Shown here piece after piece: positions 483 through 46,792 of a stretch of 46,798 bases of DNA. Location: assembly GCA_002269645.1 (NCBI GenBank), contig NIVC01004413.1, positions 1 to 46,798 of the forward strand, written 5' to 3'. Every line of letters starts with the position of its first letter. Position 1 is the stretch's first letter. Below the pieces are notes generated by a model. That model saw nothing but the letters and a program-made list of their open reading frames with translations. It searched no databases and was not told the DNA's origin. This DNA is from Macrostomum lignano. Taxonomy: Eukaryota. The position numbers and the translations under genes are program-made.

Positions 483-9109
<8,627 letters not shown>

Positions 9110-21564: not shown

Positions 21565-30232
<8,668 letters not shown>

Positions 30233-30973
30233 CGCAGCCTAGAACAGACGATTGACTCAAGAAGTGTTGTCGAGTTGTTGTATGCTGTAACTAACAGGTT
30301 TTTATCTGCCCCCAGTTGGTCATGTAACATGTAAATAAGAGTTTTGACGTTTCACCACAGAAGTTTTTAAATACCTCTGCCGATTTTTTATGCAATTTTC
30401 TTATGCTGAATCGGTCTGCATACAATTGCAGAACCGTGTCGCAAAGCGTGTTGGTCCTTCTGTTAAAGTTTTAAAAAGCATTGCTAAGACACCACGTATG
30501 TAATCTAAAGTATTTTCTTTTCAACCAATAAAATATTTGAAATCTATTGAACTTTTAATCTGAGTCGCTGCATCAGACAGTGAGATTTCCCAGTAATACG
30601 TGCATTCAGGTCCCCTCCGTGTGTCAAGAACCGAGCGATAACTTACTGAAATTGCATTGAACCACATTCAGTTTTTTAAAACTATTTTCTTCAGAAAAGC
30701 GCTGATATCCTCAGTTACGAATCTATATCTCAGAATTTAAAATAATCGATTACATAGGTACGTGCAGATGCTTTCAGTTTTACGAAGACAAGTTTTGCGT
30801 ATACTCGTATCTGTTCAACCCCGACAAGGAAAAAGTTGGTATGTACACTAAGAGCGAAATAAAGATTAAAGGACAAACCAAAGCTTTAGAGTTACTGAGT
30901 CAACCGATGAAATATTCAATTTACTTCGAAAGCTTTCACATCCATTGCAAAGACACTAAAATCTGTCAATCGA

Positions 30974-32307
30974 TCAACCGAAGACAACGGTGTTGATATC
31001 GCCGCGGTTGCTCATCTTCCTGTAGACGTAGCGGTCGCTTCTCATCGTGAACCACACGTCGCAGCCCCAGCAGATCGAGCCGACGAAAGCCGCGTCCGAG
31101 CAGCTGTTGCCGATCTTGGAGCGGATCAGATTGGTCCAGGACTCGGCGTGGCTTCCGGAGCCCACCCGCTGAGCGGCGTCAAGCGCGGCGTTGCCTTTGG
31201 CCCGAGTAAATCTGGAAGATCCAGGGTTAGAACTGGCCACAACGACGTTGCGACCTCCGTGAGTCCTGAACCGAGCGTCTCCGCCACAGTAGGACACCCA
31301 GTGCTTGTCACCGCCAGAGACGTCCTTGTACGAAAGGGCGATCCAGTAACGACGGTCAAACTTGTCAGCGAGGAAGCGGTACATATGGCCTGAGAAGTCT
31401 TTGTTGCTTAGGTGTCTGTTATCCAGGATGACGCGACCAATGTCGGAAGTCATCTGAGAGTGGTACTTGCTCAGTACACCGTTCTCAACCTGCTGCATGC
31501 GGGTGAGCATCTTTTCCATCCGGGTGTCCCACAGTGCCTGAGTGACGGTGGCAGCATGATCTCCGTGGACCATCTTCTCGTAGGCGATCTCGAGCTGAGC
31601 ACCCCTCATGACCAGACGCTGCATGGCTAGCAGAAAGTTCATCACGTTACGCCTGTGGTTCTGGGTGTAGTGGACAACTGCCACTCCAAGGTTGTCGGAA
31701 ATGGTGAGGTCTGTTTCCACGACGGCCTGGTACAGTTTAAGTGCGGCAATTGGGTTTTTGCGGAAGGCGGTAAGGAACTGACGCTTGTGGACTTCGCGCG
31801 TCATGGCGTCGTTAGCTCCGACGTACTATCCAGCAGATGTGTGGTAGCCACAATGAAGGACTCGTAGTTGGCGTAGGTCACGCGAGTGGTTTGCCACTCG
31901 ATCAGTCGCTTGACCTCCTCAAGCTGTAGAGAGATGCTGTCTAGCTTGGCGTGCACCTCCTTGAACTGTTCGCGCATGAACTTCATCTCGGCGGATTCTT
32001 GCGCTCCCAGACCGCCAATCAGGTTGATGATGGCAATTACGAAGGACAGAACCTTTGAGACGACTTGGGCCACGATGTAGACCTTGGGAAACGCCTTGAA
32101 GATGTCTGAGTTAAAGATGTCAACGAAGTTCTTGACAGCCTCAAGAGCCTTCTTGGCTGTCTCCAAGTCATCGTTGACAGGCAGCGCCATCAGCTCTCCG
32201 GCGGTCTCCTCCATCCTCAGCACCATGGCACCATCCCCTGGCGACACCACTTCGGTGGCGGAGGCGACAGCGCACACAGCAAGAAGTCCAAGCAGAAGCA
32301 GCTTCAT
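30974..32307 (-). CDS. Secreted rapunzel/SE-cephalotoxin-like protein, copy A (intronless; 1-bp frameshift near 31826)
   Basis: Signal peptide MKLLLLGLLAVCAVASA. ORFs 32307-31801 and 31804-30974 join into a full homolog of copies B and C if one base is restored (..HLLD-x-YVGANDAMTREVHKRQF). Confidence 0.8.
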
Positions 32308-32863
32308 TGTCTATTTTTGCTCCGTCTTAGTCAAAGCCCAACTAGCAACCAGAAATTTATAGCGCTTTGTCCGTTAAAAAATAATTCCAGCCGCAGGTTT
32401 ACTCGTCTCACGGGTTGTCAAGCGGATAGTTGGACAATTTCGAAACGGAGCCCCAATCTGGAAGATTGGCACCGCAGGCCATGTGACTCAGTCACACAGC
32501 AAAAATGTATTGCTGCAGCATAAAGATAGGCTACTCTTCCACTGCAGTTAGTTTTATGTTTTTCTAGAATTTCACCTTGTACAACTTTTTTAACTCACAT
32601 TTATTAGACTCATTGTGATCGAAATAAGGTAAGTCGTAATTTTTTACCTCGTTATTCTCTATAAACCGATATGCTTTTAGCCGTGAGACTTCAATAAAGA
32701 AATCCAAGGCTAATAAAATTAATCAATCCGGCTAAATTGACATTATCTTTCTGCATAAGAATTCTTTCCAAGTTAGCAACTGATGTCGAAATCCCAAGAA
32801 AATTATTTTAGCACTAGGGGGAGGGCTGTCATCGGTTTCAAGACAACTTGGAGAAACTTGACG

Positions 32864-32913
32864 GCTGATAAGAACAGCCGCTTGCTGATAAATCCTGGAG
32901 TGATTTTATAAGA
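32864..32913 (+). promoter_or_regulatory. Putative core promoter of copy B: two GCTGATAA (GATA) motifs and TATAAGA
   Basis: GCTGATAAG 32864-72, GCTGATAAA 32884-92, TATA-like box ~55 nt before the ATG. Copies A (TATAAAT, 32355-61 minus) and C (TATAAAA, 36370-76 minus) have TATA boxes at similar distances. Confidence 0.45.
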
Positions 32914-32964
32914 CAAGTAACAAATTGAATTGGTAATTGAAACCGAAGGCAAATCTTGAAAGCC

Positions 32965-34293
32965 ATGAAGTCGCTACTAATTGGTCTGGTAGTCCTGTGC
33001 GCCATCGCCGCATGCGCGCACGCAGGCCGAACCGAAGCTGCGGCAGTGGTAGTCCGCTCGGAGGAGACCGGCCTTGACGTCTTTTCGGCGCCCTACAACC
33101 GAGATCTCGACATTGCTAAAGATGCTCTAGAAGCAGTGAAAGAGTTTATTGAGTTTTTTAATTCGGATCTATTTGAAGAGTCTGGTGTAAAGGAAATCGC
33201 AGAAGTAGTCTCCAAGGTATTTACCTTCGTAACCTCCATTATCGACCTGATCCAGGGTGCTCAGGGTGGTGAGTCGGCCGAGATGAAGTTCCTTCGTGAG
33301 CAGTTCGCTCAGGTTCACGCAAAGTTGGACAGCATTTCGCTGCAGCTCGATGACGTCAAGAGACTTATCGAGTGGCGAACAACGCGAGTGATGTACGCGA
33401 ACTACGAGACCTTCATCATCGCGGCCAGCTCAATCCTCAACAATTACGTGGCGGCACCTGAGAGCTCCCGCGAGGTGCTGAAACGCCAGTTCATCGCTGC
33501 ATTCCAGCATAACCCGCTCGCTCCGCTGAAGCTGTACCAGGCAATCGTAGAGAAGAACTTCGTGATCGCCGAGAACCTCGCTGCCGCGGTGGTCCACTAC
33601 ACCCAGAACCACCGACGCCACGTGATCAACTTCTTGCTGGCCATGCAGCGCTTGATCATGAGGGGCGCACAGCTCGAGATCGCCTACGAGAAGATGGTCC
33701 ACGGAGACGGAGCCGGAAACGTGGCCAAGACCGTTTGGGACGGTCGCATGCAGAAGCTGCTTAGCCGCATGAAGCAGCTGGAGACTGACGTAAAAAACCG
33801 GTACCACTCTCAGATGACTTCCGACATTGGTCGCGTCATCCTGGATAACAGACACCTAAGCAACAAAGACTTCTCAGGCCATATGTACCGCTTCCTCGCT
33901 GACAAGTTTGACCGTCGTTACTGGATCGCCCTTTCTTACAAGGACGTCTCTGGCGGTGACAAGCACTGGGTGTCCTACTGTGGCGGAGACGCTCGGTTCA
34001 GGACTCACGGAGGTCGCAACGTCGTTGTGGCCAGTTCTAACCCTGGATCTTCCAGATTTACTCGGGCCAAAGGCAACGCCGCGCTTGACGCCGCTCAGCG
34101 GGTGGGCTCCGGAAGCCACGCCGAGTCCTGGACCAATCTGATCCGCTCCAAGATCGGCAACAGCTGCTCGGACGCGGCTTTCGTCGGCTCGATCTGCTGG
34201 GGCTGCGACGTGTGGTTCACGATGAGAAGCGACCGCTACGTCTACAGGAAGATGAGCAACCGCGGCGATATCAACACCGTTGTCTTCGGTTGA
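32965..34293 (+). CDS. Secreted rapunzel/SE-cephalotoxin-like protein, copy B (intronless, 442 aa)
   Basis: ATG at 32965, signal peptide MKSLLIGLVVLCAIAACAHA. ESAEMKFLREQFAQVHAKLD, KRQFIAAF, LYQAI, RRHVINF and WDGRMQKL recall the rapunzel-family motifs as I remember them (ESKEAEYMKEQF..., LYNAV, RRAVEDF, WAEKMKVV). C-terminal KFDRRYWIALSYKDVSGGDKH domain. Family assignment is from memory, not from a search. Confidence 0.82.
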   Translation: MKSLLIGLVVLCAIAACAHAGRTEAAAVVVRSEETGLDVFSAPYNRDLDIAKDALEAVKEFIEFFNSDLFEESGVKEIAEVVSKVFTFVTSIIDLIQGAQGGESAEMKFLREQFAQVHAKLDSISLQLDDVKRLIEWRTTRVMYANYETFIIAASSILNNYVAAPESSREVLKRQFIAAFQHNPLAPLKLYQAIVEKNFVIAENLAAAVVHYTQNHRRHVINFLLAMQRLIMRGAQLEIAYEKMVHGDGAGNVAKTVWDGRMQKLLSRMKQLETDVKNRYHSQMTSDIGRVILDNRHLSNKDFSGHMYRFLADKFDRRYWIALSYKDVSGGDKHWVSYCGGDARFRTHGGRNVVVASSNPGSSRFTRAKGNAALDAAQRVGSGSHAESWTNLIRSKIGNSCSDAAFVGSICWGCDVWFTMRSDRYVYRKMSNRGDINTVVFG

Positions 34294-34946
34294 TTTCTGT
34301 CTGATGTCTGCAGTGCATTGTTGCTGTAGAGTGACGAATAATCTGTCGCTTTTTGGTTCAAACGAAATACACTTGTGTTGCTGTTTGAATGTAGGGATTA
34401 GATATATATATATCTATATTGGCCAATTTTATCCGTTTCAATGCCTTAGTTATTTTTTAATTTAGTTAATGTTATTTATTACATTGCCAAATTGTATTAC
34501 AAAAAAAGACGGAAAAAACAGTAATTTTGAGCATTTGCGTTTGACACAACCACGGTTTCTATAAAACAGCTATACTTCCAGTTTACATGCATTATATTTT
34601 TGACTCCCTTCTCGTCAAACTGTTTGTCATTTTTTTATAAAAGATGAATTAAAAATGCAGTTGAAGCTACTGTGATAGGCACATAATGCATATTTCATTA
34701 AAACTAATGCTTAAAGAATTACATGACTACCTCTGCATCGGACCACTAATTGACTAAACATTAGAAAGAACTCTGAAAATTAGGAAAGCAACAGCTAGGG
34801 CAAAAACCATGGTTGAACCAGAATTGAAAGCTTTTTCAACAAACGAGCCAAGTGTATTTTTCCATGAAAAAAACGAAACACGCTTCCATTCTTTTCCAAA
34901 CACAAAATTTCGCAACTAGCTAGCTATATGTCATTTTGCAAGAGTC

Positions 34947-36314
34947 CTAGCCGAAGATAATGGTGTTGATGTCGCCCCGGTTGCTCATCTTCCTGTAGAC
35001 GTAGCGGTCGCTTCTCATCGTGAACCACACGTCGCAGCCCCAGCAGATCGAACCGACGAAAGCCGCATCCGCACAGCTGTTGCCGATCTTGGAGCGGATC
35101 AGATTGGTCCAGGACTCGGCGTGGCTTCCGGAGCCCACCCGCTGAGCGTCGTCAAGCGCGGCGTTGCCTCGCGGCTGACTGAACCTCGATGATCTCTTAT
35201 CTGCGCTGGCCACCACGACGTTGCGGCTTCCGTGAGTCCTAAATCGGAGATCTCCGCCGCAGAAGGACACCCAGTGCTTGTCACCGCCAGAGACGTCCTT
35301 GTACGCCAAAGAAAACCAGTTGCGATGATCGAACTTGTCAGCGAGAAAGCGGTACATATGGCCTGAGAAGTCTTTGTTGCTGAGGTGCCTGTTGTTCAAG
35401 ATGACGCCACCAATGTCGGAAGTCATCTGAGAGTGGTACTTACTCTTTATCTCGTTTTCCAGGCGCATCATTCGAATCAAAAGCTTCTCCATCCGGCCAT
35501 TCCAAACGGTCTTGGCCACGTTTCCGGCTCCGTCTCCGTGGACCATCTTCTCGTAGGCGATCTCGAGCTGTGCGCCCCTCATGATCAAGCGCTGCATGGC
35601 CAGCAAGAAGTTGATCACGTGGCGTCGGTGGTTCTGGGTGTAGTGGACCACAGCGGCAGCGAGGTTCTCGGCGATCACGAAGTCCTTCTCTACGATGGCC
35701 TGGTACAGCTTCAGCGGAGCGAGCGGGTTATGCTGGAATGCAGCGATGAACTGGCGTTTCAGCACCTCGCGGGAGCTCTCAGGTGCCGCCACGTAATTGT
35801 TGAGGATTGAGCTGGCCGCGATGATGAAGGTCTCGTAGTTCGCGTACATCACTCGCGTTGTTCGCCACTCGATAAGTCTCTTGACGTCATCGAGCTGCAG
35901 CGAAATGCTGTCCAACTTTGCGTGAACCTGGGCGAACTGCTCACGAAGGAACTTCATCTCGGCCGACTCGGTGCCTTGCAGGTGTTGAATTAGGTCGATG
36001 ACGGATGTGACAAATGTAAAGACTTTGGAGACGACTTCTGCAACCTGGGTGACGTTGCCGTTTACCTTTTCAAAGATTTCAGAGTTGAAAAACTCGATGA
36101 ACTCTTTTGTGGCCTCAAGAGAGTCCTTTGCGGTGTCGAGGTCTCGACTGTTCGTTGCCTGAGCAAAAACATCAACACCTGTATCCTCGGTTCGGATCTC
36201 GATGTCTCCAGCAGCTTCCTTTGTAATGCCACCATCACTTGCAGCTTCCAGAAGGCCCGTGCCATCTGTGGCAGCGGCGCACATGCTGAGCAGACAAATA
36301 AGAAGTATTCTCAT
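34947..36314 (-). CDS. Secreted rapunzel/SE-cephalotoxin-like protein, copy C (intronless, 455 aa)
   Basis: ATG at 36314, signal peptide MRILLICLLSMCAAA; full-length paralog of copy B. Confidence 0.82.
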   Translation of the reverse strand: MRILLICLLSMCAAATDGTGLLEAASDGGITKEAAGDIEIRTEDTGVDVFAQATNSRDLDTAKDSLEATKEFIEFFNSEIFEKVNGNVTQVAEVVSKVFTFVTSVIDLIQHLQGTESAEMKFLREQFAQVHAKLDSISLQLDDVKRLIEWRTTRVMYANYETFIIAASSILNNYVAAPESSREVLKRQFIAAFQHNPLAPLKLYQAIVEKDFVIAENLAAAVVHYTQNHRRHVINFLLAMQRLIMRGAQLEIAYEKMVHGDGAGNVAKTVWNGRMEKLLIRMMRLENEIKSKYHSQMTSDIGGVILNNRHLSNKDFSGHMYRFLADKFDHRNWFSLAYKDVSGGDKHWVSFCGGDLRFRTHGSRNVVVASADKRSSRFSQPRGNAALDDAQRVGSGSHAESWTNLIRSKIGNSCADAAFVGSICWGCDVWFTMRSDRYVYRKMSNRGDINTIIFG

Positions 36315-37326
36315 TTTCCCTTTTGACTTAACCTGGTTGGATTGCGAATCCACTTTTTACAGTCGAAGCTTTTATAGTGGAAATATTGATTTGAAAAGTT
36401 ATCATTATTTTTTTCTTATCAGCTTGTCGTGCGCCTTTAGTGTGATTCCTTCTGGGCTTTTCTAGCGCTCCTTCTGTGCGAGTTCCTATACTGTAAGAGA
36501 TAAACGAATCTTCCTTGCCTAATACATGTATCTGTAAATCCTAGGCTGCAGTCCTAGCTTGCTGCAGGTTCTTCGATAAGTGGTTCGACCTAGCCATGCC
36601 ATTATTTAATTCTATTTTATTAGTCTGCCTTTAATCTGATTTCAGCAAAGCTTTTTTGGCTAAATTATGAATTAACTTGTTAAAAATCATGGGTTACGAT
36701 TATTTATCATATGTACAGTCTTCATCAAGGGAGAAGCGGCGTGGAGCTAAGACGACCCCAGCACAGTGGTCTCAACTCCAGTGTTCTTCAGAGCGAGGTG
36801 CCTGCCTATCAGCTTCTGTGCGGCAGATACGCGTCGAAGGCAGCTGCTCAGCGATCGAAAAGTTATTTTTCACTTTTTTTTCACTTTTTCAGGATAGCCT
36901 AGGCAATTCAACCCTAATTCGGTCCCTTTCTGTCGTAGAACCGACTCCAAACCTGCAGTCCTGGAATGCAAGGCCCAGCTTGTGGCTCAATATCTTTATT
37001 CTGAAATCGTGTTTCTGTATTGGATTTGGAGTGCCTGCGTACCGACCCTCTGCTATGTGTAGCGTCGCCAGTGTACACTTGGCGGTCCCCGTCTCAGAGT
37101 GTGTTGGGGTGGGGTTGATGTGCGTGAGGCGTTGTTGAGTCAGAGAGTTGGAGAGAGAGAACATTGATTTAATTTAATATATATGCAATAATTTAGCCAC
37201 AGGGCTCATTTACCTGTTTTTTGTTAAAGTCTAACCCTCAGATTTTATTAGACTTAATTAGCGGAACGGCCGGAGGGCAAGGATTGGAGAGCACGAGCAA
37301 AACATCCCAAAAACCCGGACAAAGGA

Positions 37327-38339
37327 TTAAAAAGTAGGGTAGACGGCGACGGGGCGAGTCAGGCGAGCGCTAGGAGGTGCCGACAGCACACGGTTGACCA
37401 TTGGGCGCAGGAGACGGAGGCAACCTCCCGACTGCGGCAGGTAGCGTGAAACGGCGCCGCTGCGCCAGCCGCCCAGCCGCTTGATCTGCTCCACGTCGAG
37501 GCCGCTGTCGAACGCCAGACAGGCGCCACCCCGTCGTAGAGAGTGGCCTGAGAAAGCTGTCGCCGCCCAACCCGCATCTGTCAGAGCCCGAGCGAGGCGG
37601 CGGTCGAATTGACGCGATGACATCGGGCACCAGCTTCCGGCGATGTGGACGCAAAACAGCCGAGTGAGCGCCGGCGCAGACCGCAGCTTGTTAGTCTGAA
37701 AATGCCGCCGCAGGGCTTGGACAGGGCATAGTGGGTGGCTTCCGAGCGCTGGCAGCACCGCCTCCTGGTAGTCTTGTCCGCATTGGTTGGTCTTCGACTG
37801 TCGAACTCGGAGTCTCCAGCACTGACTATCGGCCTGAGTGTCGCCGACGAGAATGGAGTGGCGCCCGCAGACATTTGCTTTCCTGAGAAGCGCCCAGAAG
37901 CAGCAGAGCACGGCGGCCCAAAAGGCGGCGTCTGCAGGGTCTCTTGGGTTCACCTGGTTTGCCAGTGAAAGCAGAACAGCCGGGGTGATGGGGTCTTTCT
38001 GCTTGACTGAATGGCCGCTTGTCCGTTTGGCGCTCTTGACTGCCAGATCGATCAGGCCGGACTTGGTGATGTCGGGGAGTAGCGCCAGCTTGAAGCTCCA
38101 GCTGATGGCCGCCAGGTGTCCACCGAGGCTACCGGGTGCCACGCCGCGCTTAGCCAGGCGTCGCACATACTCGACCAAGTGCACCGGGGACGCCGCTAGT
38201 GGCTGAACACCTTCGAGGTTGCAGAAGCGCTGCCACTGTTCGAGGTTTGAAGCGTACGATGCCCTCGTACTAGGAGCCCAGGCGTCGGCGAGAAAGCGAA
38301 GGAGCGGCCCGGGTAGGCGGGAGGCAGGAGGCGCCGGAC
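37327..38339 (-). CDS. Tyrosine recombinase of the YR retrotransposon
   Basis: Frame extends upstream of the called ORF (…LADAWAPSTRASYASNLEQWQRFC). Catalytic residues present: R (LLRKAN), K (SKTNQ), HxxR (GHSLRRG), W (LGGWRS), Y (VSRYL). No ATG; a strong splice acceptor precedes it at 38340-41. Confidence 0.9.
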
Positions 38340-40148
38340 CTGCAAAAGCAAAAGGGAGGCGGAGGCAGGGCAGAGTGCGTGGCGCGAGATGCAGCAGGAT
38401 TCAGCAGCTAAATCATGCAGGCTACGGTAGAAGCGGAGAAAGAAATTCTGCGCCCCGCTTCTAGAAGCAAGGCGAGAGGCCGGGTCCGCCAGGACCTGGA
38501 AGGCGCCCGGAACGTGAAAGGCCCGCAGCCGCAGACCCCACGCGTCGCAGGCAAGCGACAGCGTGTGCAGGAGCCGGTTGACGTCGTTACATGGCGAGCT
38601 GAGCTTGTTCAGCGCACCGACAGCCGCTGAGCTGTCGCTGTACACGACGATGTCCGCACCGGCGAAGCGGCCCGGGGCCGCGAGGATGCTGAGGACAGGC
38701 GTGATGGTCTCCTTAACGTTGATGTGGGCCGAAGCAAAACGGCCACCAGCGTCGTTCTTCCAGTTGATGTAGAGCCAGTCGGATTTATTGGCCTCCCGAA
38801 CAATGCAGGCACCACCCGAGTTGCAGGCGTCAGTCTCGATGACGATCTTTCGAGCGTAGCGAGGCCAGATGGGCGCGCAGCCAACGGACTGAAGGCTTCT
38901 CCTCCACCAGTGCAGCAGCTCAGTGAGGTGCGGGGTCAGCCGCAATTTGTCCCCAGGTCTAGTCGCCCGGCTCGCCAGCATCAGTAGAGGGCGGATGGAA
39001 GCTCGGCCTTTCCTGGTCACGCTGCTCACCCAGGACAGCTTGCCGCAGATCCGCTGAAGGTCGCGCTTGCTGATGGCACCGCGTCGATGCAAGCAGCTCC
39101 CAAGTGCGTCTTCGAGTGCACTGAGCTTGGCCACTGGGATGCTCAGCATCCCCGACTCTGTGTCAATCAGGACGCCCAGGAAAACCGTGCGCCGCGACGG
39201 CCCGCTAGACTTCTTTTCGTTGATGGTGAAACCGAGGCTCGTCGCCAGGCTCCTCAAGCTCTCGTAAGCCTCGACACAGGACTCGTAGGTGCTCCCGGCC
39301 ACAGCGAAGTCGTCGAGGTAGCCAACGCAGGTGAACTCGCGCCGTTGCATCATGCGCACCACCGCCTTAGACAGCCTGTTGAAATGGTACACCGAGGCCG
39401 CAGCGCCGAAGCTCAGCCGGGTGTCGACCAGGTAGGTAGGCTCGCTGTCGCCGCTAAATTGCCATTTGATTCCCAGAGCGTCGAGAGAAGAAGGATGAAC
39501 ACCTACAGAGCGATACGCCTCCTTGAGATCGATCTTGGCCGTGAAGTCACCGGGCTTGAGTTGTGAGCAGAGGCCGCTAACCGTTTCAAACTTAATCTTG
39601 TGGTCTGCGATAAAGTGGTCGTTGACCGCACAGCCTTCCGGACGACTGCAGTCGTGGATGATACGGACTCCACCGTCCTCTTTCGGGATGGCACCAAGCG
39701 CGGAGATCTTGCACGGACGTCGGCTGACTGACACATACCGCCCGCTGGCGATCTCACGCTGCAATTGCTCTTCAACCAGCGTCTTGTACTCACTGGCGGA
39801 CGAGTAGTTCTCAACTTCGGAAGGCTTAAAATCTGTTTCAGTAGTGAGCGCGAAGCCGTTTTGGACTCCGTCAATTAAAAAAGGCCCATCGGGGTCGCCG
39901 TCTAGCTCCTTCGCCCAGGCATTTGCGTCAAGGGAGCCACTCGGATTGAAATTGATGTCGCGAATGGAGTAAAAACTTGGGATTAAAATTTGCGGCTGCC
40001 AGCTTGCCGGGGCCACTGGAGCCGCGGCTATTCGTTTTTTGCCGCGTGTTGCGTCTCGCCGTGGTCCGAGCGCAAGCAGACCCGGCACGCATGAGTGTAC
40101 TTGCAATTCTGGAACTTGCAGCCACCACGGGTATTGAACTTGAGGCAC
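38196..40148 (-). CDS. Reverse transcriptase-RNase H of the YR retrotransposon
   Basis: KIDLKEAY, SFGAA, GYLDDF, FLGVLID; RNase H ETDAC..HINVKE..YSDS..HVPG..ADPASR. Confidence 0.93.
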   Translation of the reverse strand: MPQVQYPWWLQVPELQVHSCVPGLLALGPRRDATRGKKRIAAAPVAPASWQPQILIPSFYSIRDINFNPSGSLDANAWAKELDGDPDGPFLIDGVQNGFALTTETDFKPSEVENYSSASEYKTLVEEQLQREIASGRYVSVSRRPCKISALGAIPKEDGGVRIIHDCSRPEGCAVNDHFIADHKIKFETVSGLCSQLKPGDFTAKIDLKEAYRSVGVHPSSLDALGIKWQFSGDSEPTYLVDTRLSFGAAASVYHFNRLSKAVVRMMQRREFTCVGYLDDFAVAGSTYESCVEAYESLRSLATSLGFTINEKKSSGPSRRTVFLGVLIDTESGMLSIPVAKLSALEDALGSCLHRRGAISKRDLQRICGKLSWVSSVTRKGRASIRPLLMLASRATRPGDKLRLTPHLTELLHWWRRSLQSVGCAPIWPRYARKIVIETDACNSGGACIVREANKSDWLYINWKNDAGGRFASAHINVKETITPVLSILAAPGRFAGADIVVYSDSSAAVGALNKLSSPCNDVNRLLHTLSLACDAWGLRLRAFHVPGAFQVLADPASRLASRSGAQNFFLRFYRSLHDLAAESCCISRHALCPASASLLLLQVRRLLPPAYPGRSFAFSPTPGLLVRGHRTLQTSNSGSASATSKVFSH

Positions 40149-41020
40149 ACGGGCGCACCTTGGATCACCGGAATCTTCCTATCCATGCGAGAACGGGCAT
40201 GTTGTGGAGTCTGCTGCGGGGCGATGAGGTGCCGTGCCACCAGCGAGAAACTCGGTCGCGCCCAGTCTTGCATGCCCGCCTGCTGCTCTCTTCTAAATGC
40301 GTCGTCGAACCGCATGATCCTGGTGGTGTCGTAACCTGCCTCGACTAGCTCACCGATCTGCACATTGTACTGCAAGTACTGCCGAACGCCTTCCAGGTCG
40401 AGCTGTCCCCTAGAGATCAGGGCGTCGAGGATGCGCGCGTTGCCGACTATCCACTGACCGATTCCCAGCGATTCGGGTTTAGGCTGATTGGCGGTTGGAT
40501 GCAGCATCTTTTCCCTACGACTCGCCGACGCCGTCCGAGGGTCGAAACCGCAGAAATCCGCAACGACGAGTGGTGCCGCCCGTAGCCCTAGTTGAGCTAC
40601 TGAGGGTTCGAGCCTGGTCTCGAACCCGGGACCTCTGAGCATACTTGGGATATTCATGTCGCTACTACAATCAGAGGGCTCATTAAGAAGCTGTTGGTCC
40701 ACCTCACCTGGTCTAAATCGGCCTTCCAGCTGCTGGCGCATTGCTGCCGTCTCCGATTCCAGGCTAGCTATCTTCCGCCGGAGCTCTGCTAGGTCCAGCG
40801 CCTCCCCTGCCTCCAGCCGTTGTTGCTGCTGCTGCCGCCGACCTTCGCTGTCGGTTTCCGCGGAGTTTGACGCCGCTTGTTCCCGCCGACTAGCTGCTTC
40901 GCTCTGGTTCATCGCAGTGGAGAGTCTGCTGACCAGGTCTTTCTTGTAGCCGTGCGTGCTCAGGCCCCTATCACTCAATTCTTCACGTAGCTGATTTACA
41001 GTCATCCTACGCAAACTCAT
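40028..41020 (-). CDS. Gag-like ORF1 with N-terminal SAP motif and C-terminal CCCH-type zinc finger
   Basis: MTVNQLREELSDRGLSTHGYKKDLVSRL matches the SAP pattern (L...L..RGL...G.K..LV.RL); C-terminal CLKFNTRGGCKFQNCKYTHACRVC. Confidence 0.85.
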   Translation of the reverse strand: MSLRRMTVNQLREELSDRGLSTHGYKKDLVSRLSTAMNQSEAASRREQAASNSAETDSEGRRQQQQQRLEAGEALDLAELRRKIASLESETAAMRQQLEGRFRPGEVDQQLLNEPSDCSSDMNIPSMLRGPGFETRLEPSVAQLGLRAAPLVVADFCGFDPRTASASRREKMLHPTANQPKPESLGIGQWIVGNARILDALISRGQLDLEGVRQYLQYNVQIGELVEAGYDTTRIMRFDDAFRREQQAGMQDWARPSFSLVARHLIAPQQTPQHARSRMDRKIPVIQGAPVCLKFNTRGGCKFQNCKYTHACRVCLRSDHGETQHAAKNE

Positions 41021-41354: not shown

Positions 41355-44300
41355 ATGGACTCCAGGAAAAGAGGCGTGTTACGAGCGACGGTCACCAGAC
41401 TGGCACAGAAAGCCGAAGACCTGCTCAAAACAGATGCTGCTGAAGATGAAATCGACAGCGTTCTAGAGGCTCTACGGTTCAAGAAGCAGCAGCTCCAAGC
41501 AGCAGATGAAGAGCTCGCCGCGGAGGTTGACGAGAAGGACGTGCAGGCTGAAGCAGAGACGACAATGGAGTACGACCTGCTGGCTGGCAAATTGATCTCA
41601 AACCTCACCAGACGGCTCCAGGAGCTTCAGACCGCGCGGACCGGCACGCCGCAGGCAACAAACATGCTGCAGCCATACAGACGACGACTTCGTCCAAGTC
41701 TTCGGAAGAGAATTCTTCAACGACAAGGACTCAGACTGCCATCAGGTTGCCAAAACTGCCGCCACCGTCATTCAGTGGCGATCGGACCCAATGGACGGAA
41801 TTCTGGGACCGCTTCAACTCCAGTATCCATGACAACCCGAGCCTGAGTGTCGTCGACAAATTCAGCTACCTGCAGTCGTGTCTGTCTGGGAAAGCCCGAA
41901 ACTCGATCGCTGGTCTCAACATCACGAAGGACAACTACCATATCGCCATCGACAACCTGCAACGACGATTTGGATCCCGCAACGGAGCCGTGCGCGAGCA
42001 CCTGGCAAAGTTCTCGGTGCTGACCTGCTCCAGTTCGTCGGCACAGCACCTGAGGAATTTCTACGACCAAGTCAATGGAAATGTCCGCAGTCTGACGAAT
42101 CTCGGGGTGAGTGTCGAATCTTACGAATCCATGTTGCTGCCCAACTTGCTGGCGAAGCTGCCGGAAGTCGTTCGTCTCGGGATGCTGAGAACTGCTCGGA
42201 TTGCTTCCGTCGGTTATTCCTTTGGTAGCAGCTTGTCGCAGATGAGGGATGGCAATGGCTTAGATTCTGTGACGGAGTTTCTGCAGGTCTTGGAAATGGA
42301 GATTTTAGTCCGGGAGGAGGCGGCCCTTGGAGCTGCAGGGCAGACGTCCGGTTCCAATGGAGCGTCCAAGACTGCTGGTGAGAAACAGACAAGGGATGGC
42401 GGCACAGTGGCTGCGCTTCACACGAAGGTCAAAAAGGTCAGCACGGCTTGTCCCTTCTGCGAAACTGAACATGCTCCAGAGAAGTGCACTCGCCTGGTAG
42501 ACGTTGCGGCACGACTCCAGTTTTTGAAGGAGCAGAGGCGTTGCTTCAGCTGTCTCTGCAAGGGACACAGCGTCAAGACCTGCTACCACAAGAAGCAATG
42601 TGAATTCTGCCAGATGAAGCATCACCCAAGTCTCTGTAGCGCACGCATGGAGAAGCTGCAGGGTAAGGGTGGACCGAAGGCACCCGGCTCCACACTTGGA
42701 AAGGTGGGAGAAGACCGGAAGAAGTCCGAGCAGGCTGCTGCACAGAATGTGAAGAGTCAAGAAGTGAAGACCATGGCTATGGTGACAAAAGCTCAAACAG
42801 TGATCCTTCCAACAGCGGGAGCTGTACTGATTTCGACTGTTAACAATCAGGAGACTCCGGTGCGAATTCTCTTTGACTCTGCAAGCAACCGTTCGTTCAT
42901 CTTGACCAGCTTGGCTGAGAAGATGGGGCTCCAGGTCATGGGCAGAGAGACGATGGAGGTGACAACATTCGGTGGCACAGAGGCCAAGGTGCTGCAGACT
43001 GCGATGGTCGAGTTCAAGCTTCGGAAATCTGACAGCACCGCCCAGTTCACAGTGCGCGCCAACACAGTGCCTTACATCTGCTCTCATCAGCCAGTTGTCA
43101 GCAGCTTGTGCATGAAGCACTTTCAACACCTCGACATGGCAGACTGGGACATCGGTGGTGAACAGAATCCCGAGATCAGTATCCTCATCGGAGCTGACCA
43201 ATTCTACGACCTCATCACAGGTCAAGTGATTCGCTCAGAGGTCGGCTCCGGTCCAGTTGCCGTATCCAGTCAGCTCGGTTGGTTGCTGTGCGGGTCACTG
43301 TCAGATGGGATCGCCGCAAGTGAGCTAGAGACCAGGTCAGAGCAGGTTCTTCTCTGCTGTGCTCAAGGAGCGGAGAAAGGTCTGGACAGCAGCACCATCG
43401 AGGCGTTCTGGACTTTAGAAGGTCTCGGCATCAGAAGTGCAGCCGAGCCTGATCAGCGTCCACTGACTCTGAATGCCCAGTTCCAAGAGGGTCGCTACTC
43501 AGTTCAGCTGCCGTGGAAGATTCCCAAAAAGGAATTAAGATTGCCCGACAACTTCGAGGTAGCGTTCAAGAGACTAAAGAACAATCTGACGAGGCTGCGT
43601 CGTGAGCCTGCGCTTCTTCAGGAGTACCACCGCATTCTGACCAGTCAGAAGGAAGCTGGCGTAGTCGAAGAAGCTCCAGATGGGACCAGCGATCTCATCC
43701 ACTACCTACCCCACCGAGCCGTAATCCGTCCTGAAGCTGAATCGACCAAAGTTCGAGTGGTTTTCGACGCGAGTGCCAAGCGAGATCAGTGCAGTCCATC
43801 GCTGAATGACTGTCTGGAAACAGGAACCTGTTCGTTGGCCGAGATTCCGCGACTGCTTCAGGCCTTTCAACTTCATCCGATCGCCTTGACTGCCGATATT
43901 GAGAAGGCTTTTTTGCAGATCCGAATTGCAGAAGACGATCGCGATGCTCTACGATTCCTCTGGCCACGGGATCCCAGTCAAGCTGATTCACCTCTCGTTG
44001 TTCTGCGCTACGCTGCTCTGGTGTTCGGACTCACCTGCTCACCTGCCGTCCTGGAGACTGTCATTCAACACCACTTGGCATCTCACCGAGGCCAGCATGC
44101 AGAGTTCGTGGATAAGGTGTCCAAAGAAATCTATGTGGACAACCTGATCTCTGGGTGCGTGGATGAACAGCAGGCCCTGGATCTCATCCAAAAATCCCGG
44201 CACATATTCCAACAGGCTGGAATGAATCTGCGACACTGGCAGTCCAACAGCAAGAATGTATTGAAAGCGGTTCGCGCCAGCACACTAGACAGTGATGTTC

Positions 44301-46792
44301 TTGCTCCGGCGTTGTCGGCGGTGACAAAGGACATCACGGAGGACCCCTCCAGCTATTCAGCCGCCTCCTTGGGCGAAGATGGCGTATCGTCAAAAGTCCT
44401 CGGGCTGCGATGGGAGACAGGATCGGACGTGTTCGTGCTGCAGTTTTCTCCGCCAGAAGATTTGCTCAAGGCGTCGCCCTCCAAGCGTGTCGTGCTACAG
44501 CTGCTGGCCCGTGTCTACGATCCTCTGGGCTTCCTGGTTCCGCTGCTTACGTTGCCGAAATCGATGTTCCAGAAGCTGTGCGTTGAAAAGATTGCTTGGT
44601 CTTTTCGCTCGCTAAAGGAGCCGATTAAGCAGCAGTGGCTGAAGTGGTTGCAGGAGATGCTGGCAGGTCGATTTCAAGTTCCAAGGTTGGTGCTTTCGGC
44701 GACGAAGGAGGTCGAGGAGATACAGCTGCATGGGTTCTGTGATGCGTCAATCAAATGCTATGCGGCGTGTCTTTACCTGCGAGTGCAGTACACCGATGGT
44801 TCCGTCAGCTGCAACCTGGTGGCCGCCAAGGCGAGAGTGGCTCCACTGTCGGTTTTTTCAATTCCTCGGCTCGAACTCCTGGGTGCCTTGATACTCGCCA
44901 GACTGTTGACATCATCCATGAGTCAGTATCCTCATGTTCGCCAGGTGTTTTGCTGGACAGACAGTGCCGACACGCTCTACTGGATCCGGCAGCACAGACC
45001 CTGGAAGCTCTTTGTTCATAATCGGGTGACGGAGATCCGCCGCCTGGTGCCAGAGGATGCCTGGAGACATGTCCCAGGCGAGGAGAATCCGGCGGACGTT
45101 GCATCTCGAGGAACATCAGCGAGCAAGTTGCAGGCAGACAACAGCTGGTGGCACGGTCCAGACTGGCTGGCACGACCTCCTGACGATTGGCCCGACCAAT
45201 CCTTTCTCAGCTTACTGACAGCGGCAGTTGCCGAGGAGCAGAAGACACAGGCAAACCGTCCAGTTGTTCTGCTAACTGAAGCGGTCCTGACATCAGTCTA
45301 CAGGACATCAGTCAATGACACGAACTTCTCATCCTGGATCAAGCTGATTCGGGTGACAGCCTATGTCCTACGCTTCGTCAGAAACCTGCAAGCTAGAACT
45401 TCTGCAGCGGGGGAGGAGCGAGTGGGACCACTGGCTGCAGCAGAAGTCCTTGAAGCTGAAGAGCGCTGGCTGCGAGAAGTGCAGAGACGGAGTTTTCAAG
45501 CCGAAATTGCTCACCTTCAGGAGTCAGCGGCCAGTACAGATCTCAGCAGGCAGTTGAATCTTTTTCTCGACAACAAGAGTATTCTCCGAAGCCAAGGTCG
45601 ATTGAAGGAGTCCAACGCCTCTGCCGAGGTTGACTGTCCGATTCTGATCCCGAACAAGTCACACCTGGCCGAGCTTCTTCTCATCTGGGACGCTCACGCC
45701 AAGGTTCTGCACGGGGGAGTGCCCAGCACTCTTTGTAAGCTGCGAGAGAGATTCTGGCTAATCAGAGGAAGACAGCGAGTCAAGTCGATCCTGAGAAGGT
45801 GCTTTGTCTGCAGACGTCTTCAAGGACTACCATATGCAGTGAAGCAAATCCCAGCCTTACCTGAAGCACGCGTGAAGTCTGGGAGAGCCTTTGAGTGGTG
45901 CGGACTCGACTACTGCGGACCTGTCAAACTGATGGAGGACACAGAGATCGAGAAAGGCTATATCCTGGTTTTCACCTGTGCGGCCACGCGAGCCCTTCAC
46001 CTGGAACTGGTGAGCGACTTGACGACCGAGACCTTCCTGCGAGCCCTCCGACGGTTCTGTGCTCGGAGAGGAATTCCCAATCTCATCAGTGACAACGCCA
46101 AGACATTCACCAAGGCTGCCAAAATACTTCAGGCGACAAGTTCAAGACTTCTGCGCCACCAGGAAAATCACCTGGCAATTCATCGTCGAACGCGCACCGT
46201 GACAAGGAGGCTTCTGGGAGCGACTGATGAGGGACATCAAGCTGGCTTTGCGCAAGACCATCCTCAACGCAACCCTGACGCTGGACGAACTGCGGACAGT
46301 GCTAATGGAGGTGGAAGCGGTGCTCAACAGTCGGCCTCTACTCTACGTGGATGCCGAAACCAACGGAGAAGTCCTGACGCCGGCGCACTTTCTGGTCCTG
46401 CAACGGCTAACGGCGGAGCCAACTTCTAGCGGTACGCCCGAGCTCCTGCTGCCGTTGCCAACACTGCTGAGGCGAATGCGCGCCAGACTGCAAGCCTTCT
46501 GGGACTGCTGGGAGCGACAGTATCTGACCAGCCTGCGAGAACATAATCTAAGTCCCAAGCATGGCGTAACTCGAGAAGCTACGGCCGGCGACATCGTCCT
46601 GGTGAAAGGTGAAGCCGGGCAGCCGAGGCTTACCTGGTGTACCGGTCTCATCGAGTCGGTGCATCCTGGCCGAGACGGGCGGTGAGATCTGCAACGGTTC
46701 GAGTCGCGCCCAGACCTGGCCGCGGTCCCAGGAGATGCTTGATTCGCCGACCGGTGGAGAACCTGATTTTGCTGGAAGCTGTGACTGAATGA
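41355..46792 (+). mobile_element. BEL/Pao LTR retrotransposon gag-pol, decayed (3 frameshifts, 1 nonsense codon); 3' LTR lies outside the window
   Basis: LPKL..PSFSGD..W.EFWD (DUF1759-type gag), three Cys/His knuckles, protease ILFDSASNRSFI, RT YLPH..TKVRVVFDAS / ADIEKAFLQI / YVDN, RNase H LHGFCDAS..HVPGEENPADVASRG, integrase H..H..C..C, GLDYCGP, SDNAKTF, and a DUF5641-type tail FWDCW..QYL..LRE. Frameshifts near 41650, 46138 and 46680; TGA at 46200 replaces W in RAPWQGGFWER. Confidence 0.93.

What the first reader, a model, noticed from the sequence alone, without database searches (positions are those of the whole stretch)
30974..36314. Cluster of three intronless, secreted rapunzel/cephalotoxin-like genes: candidate new toxin or immune-effector family
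Seen: three ~440-455 aa paralogs, each with a signal peptide, an acidic spacer with a conserved R-[SMT]-E-[ED]-T motif, a variable amphipathic helix pair (e.g. EVVSKVFTFVTSIIDLIQG), a long helical body and a Cys-containing C-terminal domain. All are intronless in an intron-rich neighbourhood. Known: the zebrafish rapunzel proteins as I recall them lack signal peptides, SE-cephalotoxin is a secreted cuttlefish venom protein, and N-terminal amphipathic hairpins are typical of alpha-helical pore-forming toxins (Cry domain I, box-jellyfish CfTX). Inference: a lineage-specific secreted cytolysin family used in prey capture, defence or gut immunity.
Basis: partly seen in the sequence, partly recalled or inferred. 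Interest (0 to 1): 0.78.

Follow-up and report, generated by a model that had tools for sequence, protein, structure and literature searches.

The report
Secreted Rapunzel/cephalotoxin-like gene trio in flatworm
The window holds three neighbouring, intron-free genes of the flatworm Macrostomum lignano that encode secreted members of the already catalogued Rapunzel/cephalotoxin-like protein family, so the genes are real but the family is not new, and how it works remains unknown.

Summary
Three paralogous single-exon ORFs lie at 30974-32307(-), 32965-34293(+) and 34947-36314(-). Each has a signal peptide, an acidic spacer with R-[MST]-E-[ED]-T, two amphipathic helices, a long helical body and a Cys-bearing C-terminal domain. 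One correction: g1 is split by a 1-nt deletion in this window. It is intact in a 99.8% identical public copy.

The "rapunzel/cephalotoxin-like" label is confirmed. phmmer reaches proteins named "protein rapunzel-like" and "cephalotoxin-like protein". A profile-profile comparison with 20 fish Rapunzels gives probability 99.9%, E 2e-34. Near-identical M. lignano proteins and all listed fish Rapunzels carry Pfam PF27742 (CTXL_M).

"New, lineage-specific family" is not supported. Relatives occur in annelids, bivalves, a nemertean and fishes. Planarians are already reported to have seven signal-peptide-bearing Rapunzel homologues in gut goblet cells.

The pore-forming idea is neither supported nor excluded. 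The AlphaFold models are confident (pLDDT 87.5 and 94.6), but no PDB fold matches at E<=0.001. The best hit is Vip3 (E 0.025, TM 0.24), and a profile comparison with Vip3 fails (1.1%). A hydrophobic segment at a conserved position is the only membrane-related hint.

The paralogues are mosaics shaped by gene conversion and are under purifying selection. Verdict: a new member of a known kind, of modest interest.

The parts
30974..32307 (-). g1: CTXL/Rapunzel-family paralogue. In this window a 1-nt deletion splits it into two ORFs (31801-32307 and 30974-31804). The conceptual product is 444 aa.
   Evidence: the intact 444-aa ORF in the sister copy L001 6349-7683 differs at only 3 nt
31825..31826 (-). 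Site of the single-T deletion (GATAGTTAC -> GATAGTAC) that shifts the frame of g1
   Evidence: pairwise alignment with L001
32965..34293 (+). g2: intact CTXL/Rapunzel-family gene of 442 aa plus stop, with no intron in the CDS
34947..36314 (-). g3: intact CTXL/Rapunzel-family gene of 455 aa plus stop, with no intron in the CDS
32965..33024 (+). g2 signal peptide (residues 1-20, MKSLLIGLVVLCAIAACAHA)
   Evidence: heuristic: hydrophobic core KD 3.27, A-H-A before the predicted cut; predicted as helix 2-21
33025..33096 (+). g2 acidic spacer, modelled with low confidence (residues 21-44). It contains R-S-E-E-T at residues 31-35 (nt 33055-33069).
   Evidence: (pLDDT 45-64)
33097..33258 (+). g2 amphipathic helix pair (residues 45-66 and 75-98). 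The second helix is the hydrophobic segment that sits just before the family motif E-S-x-E-M-K-F.
   Evidence: KD19 1.69; 27 of 51 relatives reach 1.6 or more at this position; muH 0.50 and 0.52
33277..33906 (+). g2 helical body (residues 105-314), the part that aligns with fish Rapunzel proteins
33919..34290 (+). g2 C-terminal alpha/beta domain (residues 319-442) with Cys339, Cys401 and Cys411-x-x-Cys414
   Evidence: pLDDT 94.6; no PDB match
33274..33708 (+). Gene-conversion tract g2 = g3 (g3 about 35532-35966). dS is about 0.03 here, against saturated dS further upstream.
   Evidence: (I2)
33823..34293 (+). Gene-conversion tract g2 = g1 (g1 about 30974-31444), with one synonymous difference in 156 codons
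   Evidence: (I1)

Best explanation
This is a local expansion of the metazoan CTXL/Rapunzel protein family (Pfam PF27742, 'CTXL_M') in the flatworm Macrostomum lignano. The three genes are arranged <-g1 g2-> <-g3. Each has no intron in its coding sequence and encodes a secreted protein of about 440-455 aa.

Shown by the tools: family membership; the predicted domain layout (signal peptide, disordered acidic spacer, two amphipathic helices, a helical bundle of about 210 residues, and a 125-residue alpha/beta domain with four Cys); purifying selection; and mosaic gene conversion that keeps the 3' two-thirds nearly identical while the N-terminal 100 codons are old and divergent.

Inferred from signal peptides and Cys content, and from published expression of relatives in planarian goblet cells, sea-anemone mesenterial filaments and cuttlefish and stingray venom glands: the proteins are made by gut or gland secretory cells and released to act outside the cell. 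I take the C-terminal domain to be a binding module and the helical module to be the effector. My preferred mechanism is that the hydrophobic helix, which sits at a conserved position just before the E-S-x-E-M/L motif, becomes exposed and engages a target membrane of prey or microbes. I put that mechanistic step at only about 0.3. The identity and secretion parts I put at 0.9 or more.
For: Source organism: BLAST-level identity to M. lignano proteins and 96.7-99% DNA identity to NIVC01000661.1.

Family membership: 235 representative clusters match at E<=1e-3. They include 'protein rapunzel-like' from sturgeon and shark (E about 1e-10), 'cephalotoxin-like protein [Mytilus edulis]' (E 9e-37), Owenia, Mytilus, Pinctada, Saccostrea and Lineus. 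hhalign of the invertebrate profile against 20 fish Rapunzels gives 99.9%, E 2e-34 over 328 columns. PF27742 CTXL_M is recorded for near-identical M. lignano proteins and for every fish Rapunzel listed.

Structure: AF2 full-length pLDDT 87.5, pTM 0.81. C-terminal domain alone pLDDT 94.6.

Secretion: N-terminal features fit a signal peptide. All four mature-chain Cys lie in the C-terminal domain. Most invertebrate relatives also begin with a hydrophobic leader.

Hydrophobic segment: KD19 is 1.6 or more in 27 of 51 relatives at the same alignment position, often as I-G-P-F-L-G-A-x-G-P.

Modularity: relatives carry a duplicated C-terminal domain or an added C-type lectin.

Selection and conversion: dN/dS is 0.10-0.53 where it can be computed, and dS is 0.009-0.03 in the conversion tracts.

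Expression of relatives: planarian goblet cells, with possible secretion (PMC13563047, PMC7117911); anemone mesenterial filaments (PMC5010892); stingray venom tissue (PMC6315956); cuttlefish salivary gland (PMC4986456; bioRxiv 10.64898/2026.04.09.716377).
Against: There are no expression or protein data for these M. lignano genes. No solved structure resembles either domain at a significant level, so the membrane step rests on hydrophobicity alone. The hydrophobic helix may simply be buried core, and coordinates could not be inspected. In the window proteins this segment lacks the Gly/Pro pattern of most relatives. SE-cephalotoxin's mode of action is itself unknown (PMC4986456, PMC6410017, bioRxiv 10.64898/2026.04.09.716377). 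Zebrafish RPZ5 acts inside cells on TBK1/IRF7, as cited in PMC13563047. Direct similarity to SE-cephalotoxin (B2DCR8) was not tested. The local Pfam copy lacks PF27742, so that hit is taken from precomputed annotation of 90-100% identical proteins.
Confidence: 0.6

Rival explanations
1. One reading: a new, lineage-specific family of alpha-helical pore-forming cytolysins (ClyA, Cry domain I or CfTX type) whose N-terminal amphipathic hairpin inserts into membranes.
For: The amphipathic helix pair is real, as is the hydrophobic segment at a conserved position. The proteins look secreted. Among the weak Foldseek hits are several bacterial helical toxins: Vip3Cb1 (prob 0.95, E 0.025), Vip3B (0.72), PaxB, HblL1 and MakA (0.13-0.18). 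Independently, the best ToxProt FASTA hit of Vip3Cb1 is SE-cephalotoxin, at a non-significant E of 0.092 (PMC12998829).
Against: The family is not new and not lineage-specific. No PDB match reaches E<=0.001, all TM-scores are 0.28 or lower, and no Cry entry appears among the 50 rows shown. The profile-profile comparison with a Vip3 alignment gives probability 1.1%. The Pfam SesA hit is below threshold and seen in only 4 of 51 members. dN/dS is below 1 in the N-terminal region wherever it could be computed, so no arms-race signal is detectable.
Confidence: 0.15
2. A non-lytic secreted product of gut goblet or gland cells. It could be a structural or ligand-binding component of mucus or secretory granules, or an extracellular immune modulator, and it would bind a target (glycan, nucleic acid or receptor) rather than damage membranes.
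For: Planarian Rapunzel homologues are goblet-cell products. They were pulled down with transfected DNA and are down-regulated, not induced, after injection (PMC13563047). An oyster 'rapunzel 5'-like transcript falls strongly after bacterial challenge (PMC4133350). Relatives carry added lectin or duplicated C-terminal domains, which suggests binding functions. No toxin fold is detected.
Against: The only family member with a measured activity is a crab-paralysing venom protein (PMC4986456). Family transcripts are among the most abundant in stingray venom tissue (PMC6315956). The conserved hydrophobic segment has no obvious role in a pure binding protein.
Confidence: 0.3
3. Intracellular signalling regulators acting like zebrafish RPZ5 on the TBK1/IRF7 axis, with the N-terminal hydrophobic stretch serving as a membrane anchor rather than a cleaved leader.
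For: They are homologous to fish Rapunzels over 328 columns. [quoted passage not shown]
Against: The N-termini look like canonical signal peptides with small residues at -3/-1. Four Cys are confined to the C-terminal domain. Fish proteins lack any leader. Planarian RPZ4 is seen outside the cells that express it (PMC13563047).
Confidence: 0.03
4. A decaying cluster or annotation artefact: the copies are pseudogenes or products of mis-assembly.
For: g1 carries a frameshift in this window. The public gene models at the locus are chimeric or truncated.
Against: g2 and g3 are intact here, and all three are intact in the sister copy. dN/dS is 0.10-0.24 across the body. The AF2 models are confident. 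g1 differs from its intact counterpart at only 3 nt.
Confidence: 0.05
5. Genes acquired by horizontal transfer from bacteria, which would explain the lack of introns.
For: The coding sequences lack introns, and the weak structural echoes are to bacterial toxins.
Against: No relative was found in 185,579 bacterial and archaeal genomes by pattern plus tblastn, although that scan sees close relatives only. Named relatives are all animals. GC content (0.49-0.50) matches the flanks.
Confidence: 0.02

Closest known systems
Vertebrate Rapunzel proteins (zebrafish rpz, rpz2-5/6; 'protein rapunzel-like' of fishes)
   Same: They are homologous over the hydrophobic segment, the E-S-x-E-(L/M)-x-x-(M/V)-K-x-x-F motif, the whole helical body and the first strands of the C-terminal domain (K-Y/F-D-W-x-x-W, N-V-V-V-S). 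hhalign gives 99.9%, E 2e-34. They carry the same Pfam PF27742 and are of similar size (about 390-395 aa).
   Different: The fish proteins have no signal peptide or acidic spacer. Their C-terminal halves diverge after N-V-V-V-S-Y-S, and the His of G-G-D-K-H-W is not kept. Their reported roles are intracellular or developmental: RPZ5 with TBK1/IRF7, skeletal overgrowth in the rpz mutant, and haematopoiesis (PMC13563047; bioRxiv 10.1101/2025.08.09.669486).
Planarian (Schmidtea mediterranea) Rapunzel homologues rpz1-7
   Same: [quoted passage not shown] The planarian genes are expressed in intestinal goblet cells, and the protein is seen outside the producing cells (PMC13563047, PMC7117911). This is the most likely functional analogue of the M. 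lignano trio.
   Different: No planarian sequence was available, so neither orthology nor percent identity was tested here. Expression of the M. lignano genes is unknown.
SE-cephalotoxin (Sepia esculenta, UniProt B2DCR8) and 'cephalotoxin-like' proteins of molluscs, nemerteans and cnidarians
   Same: The family name is shared (Pfam CTXL_M), and the proteins are secreted. g2 matches the cluster that holds 'cephalotoxin-like protein [Mytilus edulis]' at E 9e-37, and a Lineus longissimus protein at E 1e-33. Fish Rapunzels are named 'SE-cephalotoxin' by some sources.
   Different: From my own recollection, SE-cephalotoxin is a glycoprotein of about 1050 aa with extra regions; I did not check this. 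Direct alignment with B2DCR8 was not done. Its paralytic activity on crabs has no known mechanism (PMC4986456; bioRxiv 10.64898/2026.04.09.716377).
Vip3 vegetative insecticidal proteins of Bacillus (helical domains I-II)
   Same: Vip3Cb1 is the top Foldseek hit of the full model (9efi_A, prob 0.95, 355 columns) and Vip3B also appears (prob 0.72). Both proteins are secreted and combine long helical bundles with a downstream beta-rich domain.
   Different: E is 0.025, TM-score 0.24 and rmsd 22 A. hhalign of the family profile against five Vip3 sequences gives probability 1.1%. No sequence hit appears in the PDB profile search. This is a resemblance at most, not membership.
ClyA-superfamily alpha-pore-forming toxins (ClyA, Hbl/Nhe, MakA, XaxAB/PaxB)
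   Same: Both are elongated helical bundles carrying a hydrophobic element, and both are secreted.
   Different: Foldseek probabilities are 0.13-0.18 and TM-scores 0.12 or lower. No head domain or beta-tongue could be identified. There is no sequence similarity.

Membership tests
CTXL / Rapunzel family (Pfam PF27742, CTXL_M) | Significant sequence similarity to proteins named Rapunzel | tested here: met
   phmmer of g2 gives E 2e-10 and 1e-9 to representatives whose clusters are 'protein rapunzel-like' (sturgeon, paddlefish, shark). BLASTP gives E 4e-17 and 2e-17. hhalign A2 vs A3 (20 fish Rapunzels, including Danio Rapunzel3 B9VEN2) gives 99.9%, E 2e-34.
CTXL / Rapunzel family (Pfam PF27742, CTXL_M) | Match to the Pfam model PF27742 | tested here: inconclusive
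   The model is not in the local Pfam copy, so there is no hit for the window ORFs. The precomputed PF27742 hit is recorded for M. lignano proteins 90-100% identical to g2/g3, for the oyster relative P0093 and for all 120 fish Rapunzels listed. This is indirect but strong.
CTXL / Rapunzel family (Pfam PF27742, CTXL_M) | Shared motifs in order: hydrophobic segment, E-S-x-E-L/M..K..F, Y-T..(D/H)-R, K-Y/F-x-W-R-x-W, G-R-N-x-V-V-A-S | tested here: met
   Consensus of 51 relatives and the invariant columns (E148, F176, W258, K314, R318, W320, G341 in g2 numbering). The C-terminal-domain alignment. The same motifs align to the fish consensus.
CTXL / Rapunzel family (Pfam PF27742, CTXL_M) | Direct similarity to the name-giving SE-cephalotoxin (B2DCR8) | not tested
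The only evidence is indirect, through 'cephalotoxin-like protein [Mytilus edulis]' (E 9e-37) and literature that links SE-cephalotoxin-like and Rapunzel hits (PMC6315956).
ClyA-type alpha-pore-forming toxins | Fold: long helical bundle with a hydrophobic head or beta-tongue, detectable by structure comparison | tested here: not met
   Foldseek against PDB: PaxB prob 0.15, HblL1 0.18, MakA 0.13, TM 0.12 or lower; nothing at E<=0.001.
ClyA-type alpha-pore-forming toxins | Membrane permeabilisation by oligomeric pores | not testable with these tools
   This needs liposome, haemolysis or bilayer assays. The only hint is a hydrophobic segment at a conserved position (KD19 of 1.6 or more in 27 of 51 relatives).
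Vip3 insecticidal proteins | Structural similarity to Vip3 domains I-III | tested here: inconclusive
   Top PDB hit 9efi_A has E 0.025, prob 0.95, but TMq 0.24 and rmsd 22.5 A. 6v1v_B has prob 0.72.
Vip3 insecticidal proteins | Sequence-profile similarity to Vip3 | tested here: not met
   hhalign of A2 vs A5 (five Vip3 N-terminal regions taken from annotated Bacillus plasmids) gives probability 1.1%, E 0.049. A bait sequence recalled from memory was used only to find the records.
Three-domain Cry toxins (domain I) | Seven-helix bundle detectable by structure comparison | tested here: not met
   No Cry entry appears among the 50 rows shown out of 842 PDB matches at E<=10.
SesA / HeLo-like cell-death domains | Pfam PF17107 match above the gathering score | tested here: not met
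   13-14 bits against a cut-off of 26.3. Only 4 of 51 invertebrate relatives and no fish Rapunzel give even a weak hit.

The most novel reading that the evidence does not exclude
The CTXL/Rapunzel family as a whole could be an undescribed class of animal membrane-inserting effectors. In this reading a Gly/Pro-rich hydrophobic segment is held in a helical bundle and released, Vip3-like or fusion-protein-like, to penetrate target membranes. The previously unseen C-terminal alpha/beta fold would provide targeting. The secreted, intron-free and RNAi-accessible M. lignano trio would then be a convenient system for showing this, and for explaining both SE-cephalotoxin toxicity and the goblet-cell Rapunzels of planarians.
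Probability: 0.15. Interest if true: 0.7.

Novelty: new member of a known kind. Interest (0 to 1): 0.3.

Why it matters
The family is widespread. It occurs in flatworms, annelids, molluscs, nemerteans and fishes, and by literature reports also in cnidarians. It is abundant in venom and digestive secretory tissues. It includes a potent crab-paralysing toxin and a zebrafish growth and immunity gene. Yet no member has a known biochemical mechanism or a solved structure.

This locus adds three things. First, correct gene models for three M. lignano members, since the public models are chimeric or truncated. Second, confident structure predictions that show a two-module layout whose C-terminal domain has no counterpart in the PDB. 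Third, a clear case of mosaic gene conversion that preserves the body of the protein while the N-terminal 100 residues stay divergent.

M. lignano is transparent and amenable to RNAi and transgenesis, so it could serve for localisation and loss-of-function tests. The finding does not itself reveal a new kind of system.

Tried and rejected
1. The local Pfam scan of the ORFs gave only sub-threshold noise (SesA, MtrG, gp64) because PF27742 is missing from that copy.
2. The word-indexed homologue search found 2-3 hits, with g2 alone or with a 51-sequence alignment. It was useless for distant relatives. The full HMMER scan was needed.
3. PDB sequence searches with g2 and with the family profile gave nothing significant. 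The weak influenza HA2 hits (E 0.04-0.6) are treated as coiled-coil noise.
4. Foldseek of the full model against PDB and BFVD, and of the C-terminal domain against PDB, gave no match at E<=0.001.
5. The Vip3 lead from Foldseek was followed by building a Vip3 alignment from annotated plasmids. hhalign gave 1.1%, so it was rejected as homology.
With g2 alone it found 105 pattern matches and no relative.
7. Exact-sequence look-ups of g2 and g3 in public assemblies found nothing on record. The look-up of P0002 gave the sister locus.
8. Literature searches for the M. lignano gene IDs, for Macrostomum plus rapunzel, and for PF27742 or CTXL gave nothing relevant.
9. Positive selection in the variable N-terminus was considered. 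Nei-Gojobori dN/dS is 0.13-0.53 where it can be computed and dS is saturated, so there is no support.
10. A catalytic role for the conserved K/H/N/S of the C-terminal domain was considered. It was dropped because the His is not kept in fish Rapunzels and no enzyme fold matches.

Full report
**What is there**

The interval 30974-36314 holds three paralogous reading frames. They are g1 at 30974-32307 on the minus strand, g2 at 32965-34293 on the plus strand (442 aa from the first ATG) and g3 at 34947-36314 on the minus strand (455 aa). The order is <-g1 g2-> <-g3. So g1 and g2 diverge from a 657-bp spacer, and g2 and g3 converge. A tblastn of g2 against the window finds these three copies and no others. 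The 141-aa ORFs antisense to g2 and g3 lie inside the most conserved stretch and are by-products of it.

**Where the window comes from**

The window is Macrostomum lignano DNA. The closest proteins are BOX15_Mlig001364g3 and BOX15_Mlig026676g3. The locus that carries them, GenBank NIVC01000661.1 (L001), matches window 24883-37015 at 96.7-99%.

- Signal peptides. All three proteins start M-K/R and continue with a 10-residue core of Kyte-Doolittle 3.0-3.3. Small residues sit at -3/-1 around positions 15-20. This is a heuristic, because no signal-peptide predictor was available.
- Acidic spacer. The next 25-40 residues have a net charge of -2 to -7. They are modelled with low confidence (pLDDT 45-64) and contain RMEET, RSEET and RTEDT.
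- Amphipathic helices. Helices 45-66 and 75-98 of g2 have the largest hydrophobic moments of all predicted helices, 0.50 and 0.52.
- Body and C-terminal domain. Residues 105-314 are helical, and 319-442 form an alpha/beta domain. The only Cys of the mature chain are in that domain: C339, C401 and C411-W-G-C414.
- No intron in the CDS. The ORFs are colinear with full-length relatives, and all three are uninterrupted in L001.
- Contrast with the neighbourhood. A neighbouring channel gene with a cyclic-nucleotide-binding domain is split into short exons at about 27.1-28.3 kb. The other neighbours are retroelements and one long ankyrin ORF.

There is one correction. In this window g1 is broken. 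A single T is missing at 31825/31826 (GATAGTTAC in L001, GATAGTAC here), which splits the gene into ORFs of 168 and 276 aa. The L001 copy differs at only 3 of 1335 nt and encodes an intact 444-aa protein. Away from the conversion tract, g1 shows dN/dS of 0.10-0.13 against its paralogues. The break is therefore either an assembly error or a very recent null allele.

**Which family it belongs to**

The local Pfam library gave nothing above threshold. The word-indexed homologue search found only the two M. lignano entries. A full HMMER scan of 1.84 billion cluster representatives found 235 relatives at E<=1e-3 and 33 at E<=1e-30.

Most relatives are 400-450 aa and start with a hydrophobic leader. 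Names recovered for a sample place them in:

- Owenia (annelid), Mytilus, Pinctada and Saccostrea (bivalves) and Lineus (nemertean);
- further M. lignano paralogues that UniProt calls "Secreted protein";
- sturgeon, paddlefish and shark "protein rapunzel-like" (E about 1e-10);
- a cluster that contains "cephalotoxin-like protein [Mytilus edulis]" (E 9e-37).

A search started from the sturgeon protein returned 551 fish proteins. Among the 120 listed are zebrafish Rapunzel3, and some are called "SE-cephalotoxin" by UniRef. Every one listed carries the precomputed Pfam domain PF27742. That is the same domain recorded for the M. lignano proteins and an oyster relative. Its short name is CTXL_M.

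A profile-profile comparison of 51 invertebrate-plus-window sequences against 20 fish Rapunzels gives probability 99.9% and E 2e-34 over 328 columns. The aligned region runs from the hydrophobic segment, through the E-S-x-E-M-K-F motif and the whole helical body, into the first strands of the C-terminal domain.

The "rapunzel/cephalotoxin-like" call is therefore correct. Direct comparison with SE-cephalotoxin itself was not possible.

**The family is not new, and the idea of secreted flatworm members is not new**

A 2026 paper on Schmidtea mediterranea reports seven Rapunzel homologues. [quoted passage not shown] They are expressed in intestinal goblet cells, and RPZ4 protein appears outside the expressing cells after injury. 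Four of the genes are down-regulated in a TBK1-dependent response, and several proteins were pulled down with transfected DNA. Their function is stated to be unknown (PMC13563047; goblet-cell expression also in PMC7117911).

SE-cephalotoxin-like transcripts have been noted in several other settings:

- nemerteans (PMC4986456, PMC6410017);
- sea-anemone mesenterial filaments, at very high levels (PMC5010892);
- stingray venom tissue, together with Rapunzel hits (PMC6315956).

A "rapunzel 5"-like transcript also falls sharply in oysters after bacterial challenge (PMC4133350). The mode of action of SE-cephalotoxin is repeatedly described as unknown (PMC4986456; bioRxiv 10.64898/2026.04.09.716377).

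**Structure**

With the 51-sequence alignment, AlphaFold2 gives a confident model of g2 (pLDDT 87.5, pTM 0.81). Modelled alone, the C-terminal domain reaches pLDDT 94.6.

Foldseek against 350,542 PDB chains finds nothing at E<=0.001 for either model. For the C-terminal domain the best probability is 0.11, so it has no detectable counterpart among solved structures.

For the whole protein the top hit is the Vip3Cb1 protoxin (E 0.025, probability 0.95, but TM 0.24 and rmsd 22 A). Vip3B follows at 0.72, and the ClyA-type toxins PaxB, HblL1 and MakA at 0.13-0.18. No Cry entry appears among the 50 rows shown.

A safety study of Vip3Cb1 happens to list SE-cephalotoxin as its best, non-significant ToxProt hit (E 0.092; PMC12998829), so I followed the lead. 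Five Vip3 N-terminal regions were taken from annotated Bacillus plasmids and aligned; a sequence I recalled served only as bait to find the records. hhalign against the family profile gives probability 1.1%. I therefore treat Vip3 as a loose resemblance between long helical bundles, not as homology.

Other searches also found nothing:

- The PDB sequence search with the family profile gave only weak coiled-coil-type hits to influenza HA2.
- The viral structure library gave no match.
- The Pfam SesA hint is confined to 4 of 51 members and is absent from the fish proteins.

**What hints at a mechanism**

One family-wide feature stands out. Immediately before the conserved E-S-x-E-L/M motif lies a hydrophobic stretch of about 20 residues. 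Its best 19-residue window reaches Kyte-Doolittle 1.6 or more in 27 of 51 relatives, usually with the pattern I-G-P-F-L-G-A-x-G-P-x-x-S-L-x-x-x-F. In the window proteins the same position holds VVSKVFTFVTS(I/V)IDLI (1.66-1.69), without the Gly/Pro residues. This is probably the "transmembrane domain" predicted for the planarian proteins.

The segment could be a concealed membrane-insertion element, or simply the core of the bundle. I could not inspect coordinates to decide.

Architecture varies around a constant helical module. An Owenia protein carries the C-terminal domain twice. A Pinctada protein adds a C-type lectin. This fits an effector module joined to a binding module.

**Evolution of the trio**

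The copies are mosaics. g1 and g2 differ by one synonymous change in the last 156 codons (dS 0.009). g2 and g3 are nearly identical over codons 117 to about 260 (dS about 0.03). The remaining comparisons, above all the first 115 codons, have saturated dS.

This is the signature of repeated gene conversion between inverted copies over an old duplication. dN/dS is 0.10-0.53 wherever it can be computed, so nothing supports diversifying selection on the variable N-terminus.

The public gene models at the sister locus are wrong. One (523 aa) splices the 5' half of g3 to the 3' end of g1 across g2. The other (346 aa) starts g2 at an internal Met.

**Horizontal transfer**

A scan of one genome from each of 185,579 bacterial and archaeal species found no relative of g2, although that method sees close relatives only. 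All named relatives are animals, and GC content matches the flanks. Nothing supports HGT.

**Best explanation and its limits**

Family membership, domain layout, purifying selection and gene conversion are shown. Secretion is inferred from sequence and from the behaviour of relatives. An extracellular role in gut or gland secretions is inferred from planarian, anemone, cuttlefish and stingray data.

The step I favour is that the hydrophobic helix is released to engage a target membrane while the C-terminal domain binds the target. It rests only on hydrophobicity and on the toxicity of one distant relative, and I give it about 0.3. A non-lytic secreted binding or immune-modulating role is about as likely. 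An intracellular RPZ5-like role, pseudogene decay and HGT are all unlikely.

**Verdict**

The family assignment is right. The claims of a new, lineage-specific family and of a pore-forming fold are not supported. This is a new local expansion of a known, mechanistically unexplored family: a useful annotation and a reasonable experimental entry point, but not a surprise.

Noticed in passing
window 31825-31826 (g1): A single-T deletion relative to NIVC01000661.1 breaks g1. The two copies otherwise differ at 2 of 1335 nt. This is either an assembly indel or a very recent null allele.
   Followed up: yes
L001 (NIVC01000661.1) 6349-11887: The public gene models are wrong. BOX15_Mlig001364g3 (523 aa) joins the 5' half of g3 to the 3' end of g1 across g2. 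BOX15_Mlig026676g3 (346 aa) is g2 started at an internal Met. Three simple ORFs of 444, 442 and about 457 aa fit better.
   Followed up: yes
window 37327-41020 (-): Tyrosine recombinase (Phage_integrase, E 2e-6), reverse transcriptase and SAP-domain ORFs lie in a GC-rich (0.60) block. This looks like a DIRS-like retroelement. The sister copy L001 stops matching the window at 37015, so the element appears to be absent there.
   Followed up: partly
window 41747-46429 (+): A 1560-aa BEL/Pao-type retrotransposon polyprotein (DUF1759, Peptidase_A17, RVT_1, integrase zinc-binding domain).
   Followed up: partly
window 10069-15165 (+): One uninterrupted 1698-aa ORF made almost entirely of ankyrin repeats (Ank_2, E 5e-188).
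   Followed up: no
window 27134-28288 (+): Short exons of a cyclic-nucleotide-gated or HCN-type channel gene (cNMP_binding, E 3e-13), separated by short introns. A (CTAT)n array at 26610-26857 lies just upstream.
   Followed up: partly
window 15527-18052, 22991-24247, 8350-8949, 1234-1763: Large satellite arrays: 31 nt x 82 copies at 98% identity, 40 nt x 31, TAGT x 150, and 34 nt x 15. The 22991-24247 array coincides with a strong negative GC skew.
   Followed up: no
window 29456-29527 and 29780-29851: A 72-nt direct repeat at 99% identity, 324 bp apart, just outside g1.
   Followed up: no
g2 residues 411-414 (window 34195-34206) and the same site in g1 and g3: A C-W-G-C (CxxC) motif sits at a predicted beta-hairpin turn. 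Among the relatives examined it is shared only with the nearest one, P0003 (C-Y-G-C). It may be a lineage-specific extra disulfide.
   Followed up: partly
relatives P0007 (Owenia), P0062 (Pinctada), P0117: Architectural variants of the family: the C-terminal domain duplicated in tandem, an N-terminal C-type lectin added, and a protein with 13 repeats of the G-G-D-K-H-W..C..F-R motif.
   Followed up: partly
family profile A2 positions 89-177 (g2 residues about 105-195): Weak, non-significant hits (E 0.04-0.6) to the long-helix region of influenza HA2, and a sub-threshold Pfam hit to baculovirus gp64. Together with the Gly-rich hydrophobic segment just upstream this recalls fusion proteins, but it is at noise level.
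   Followed up: partly
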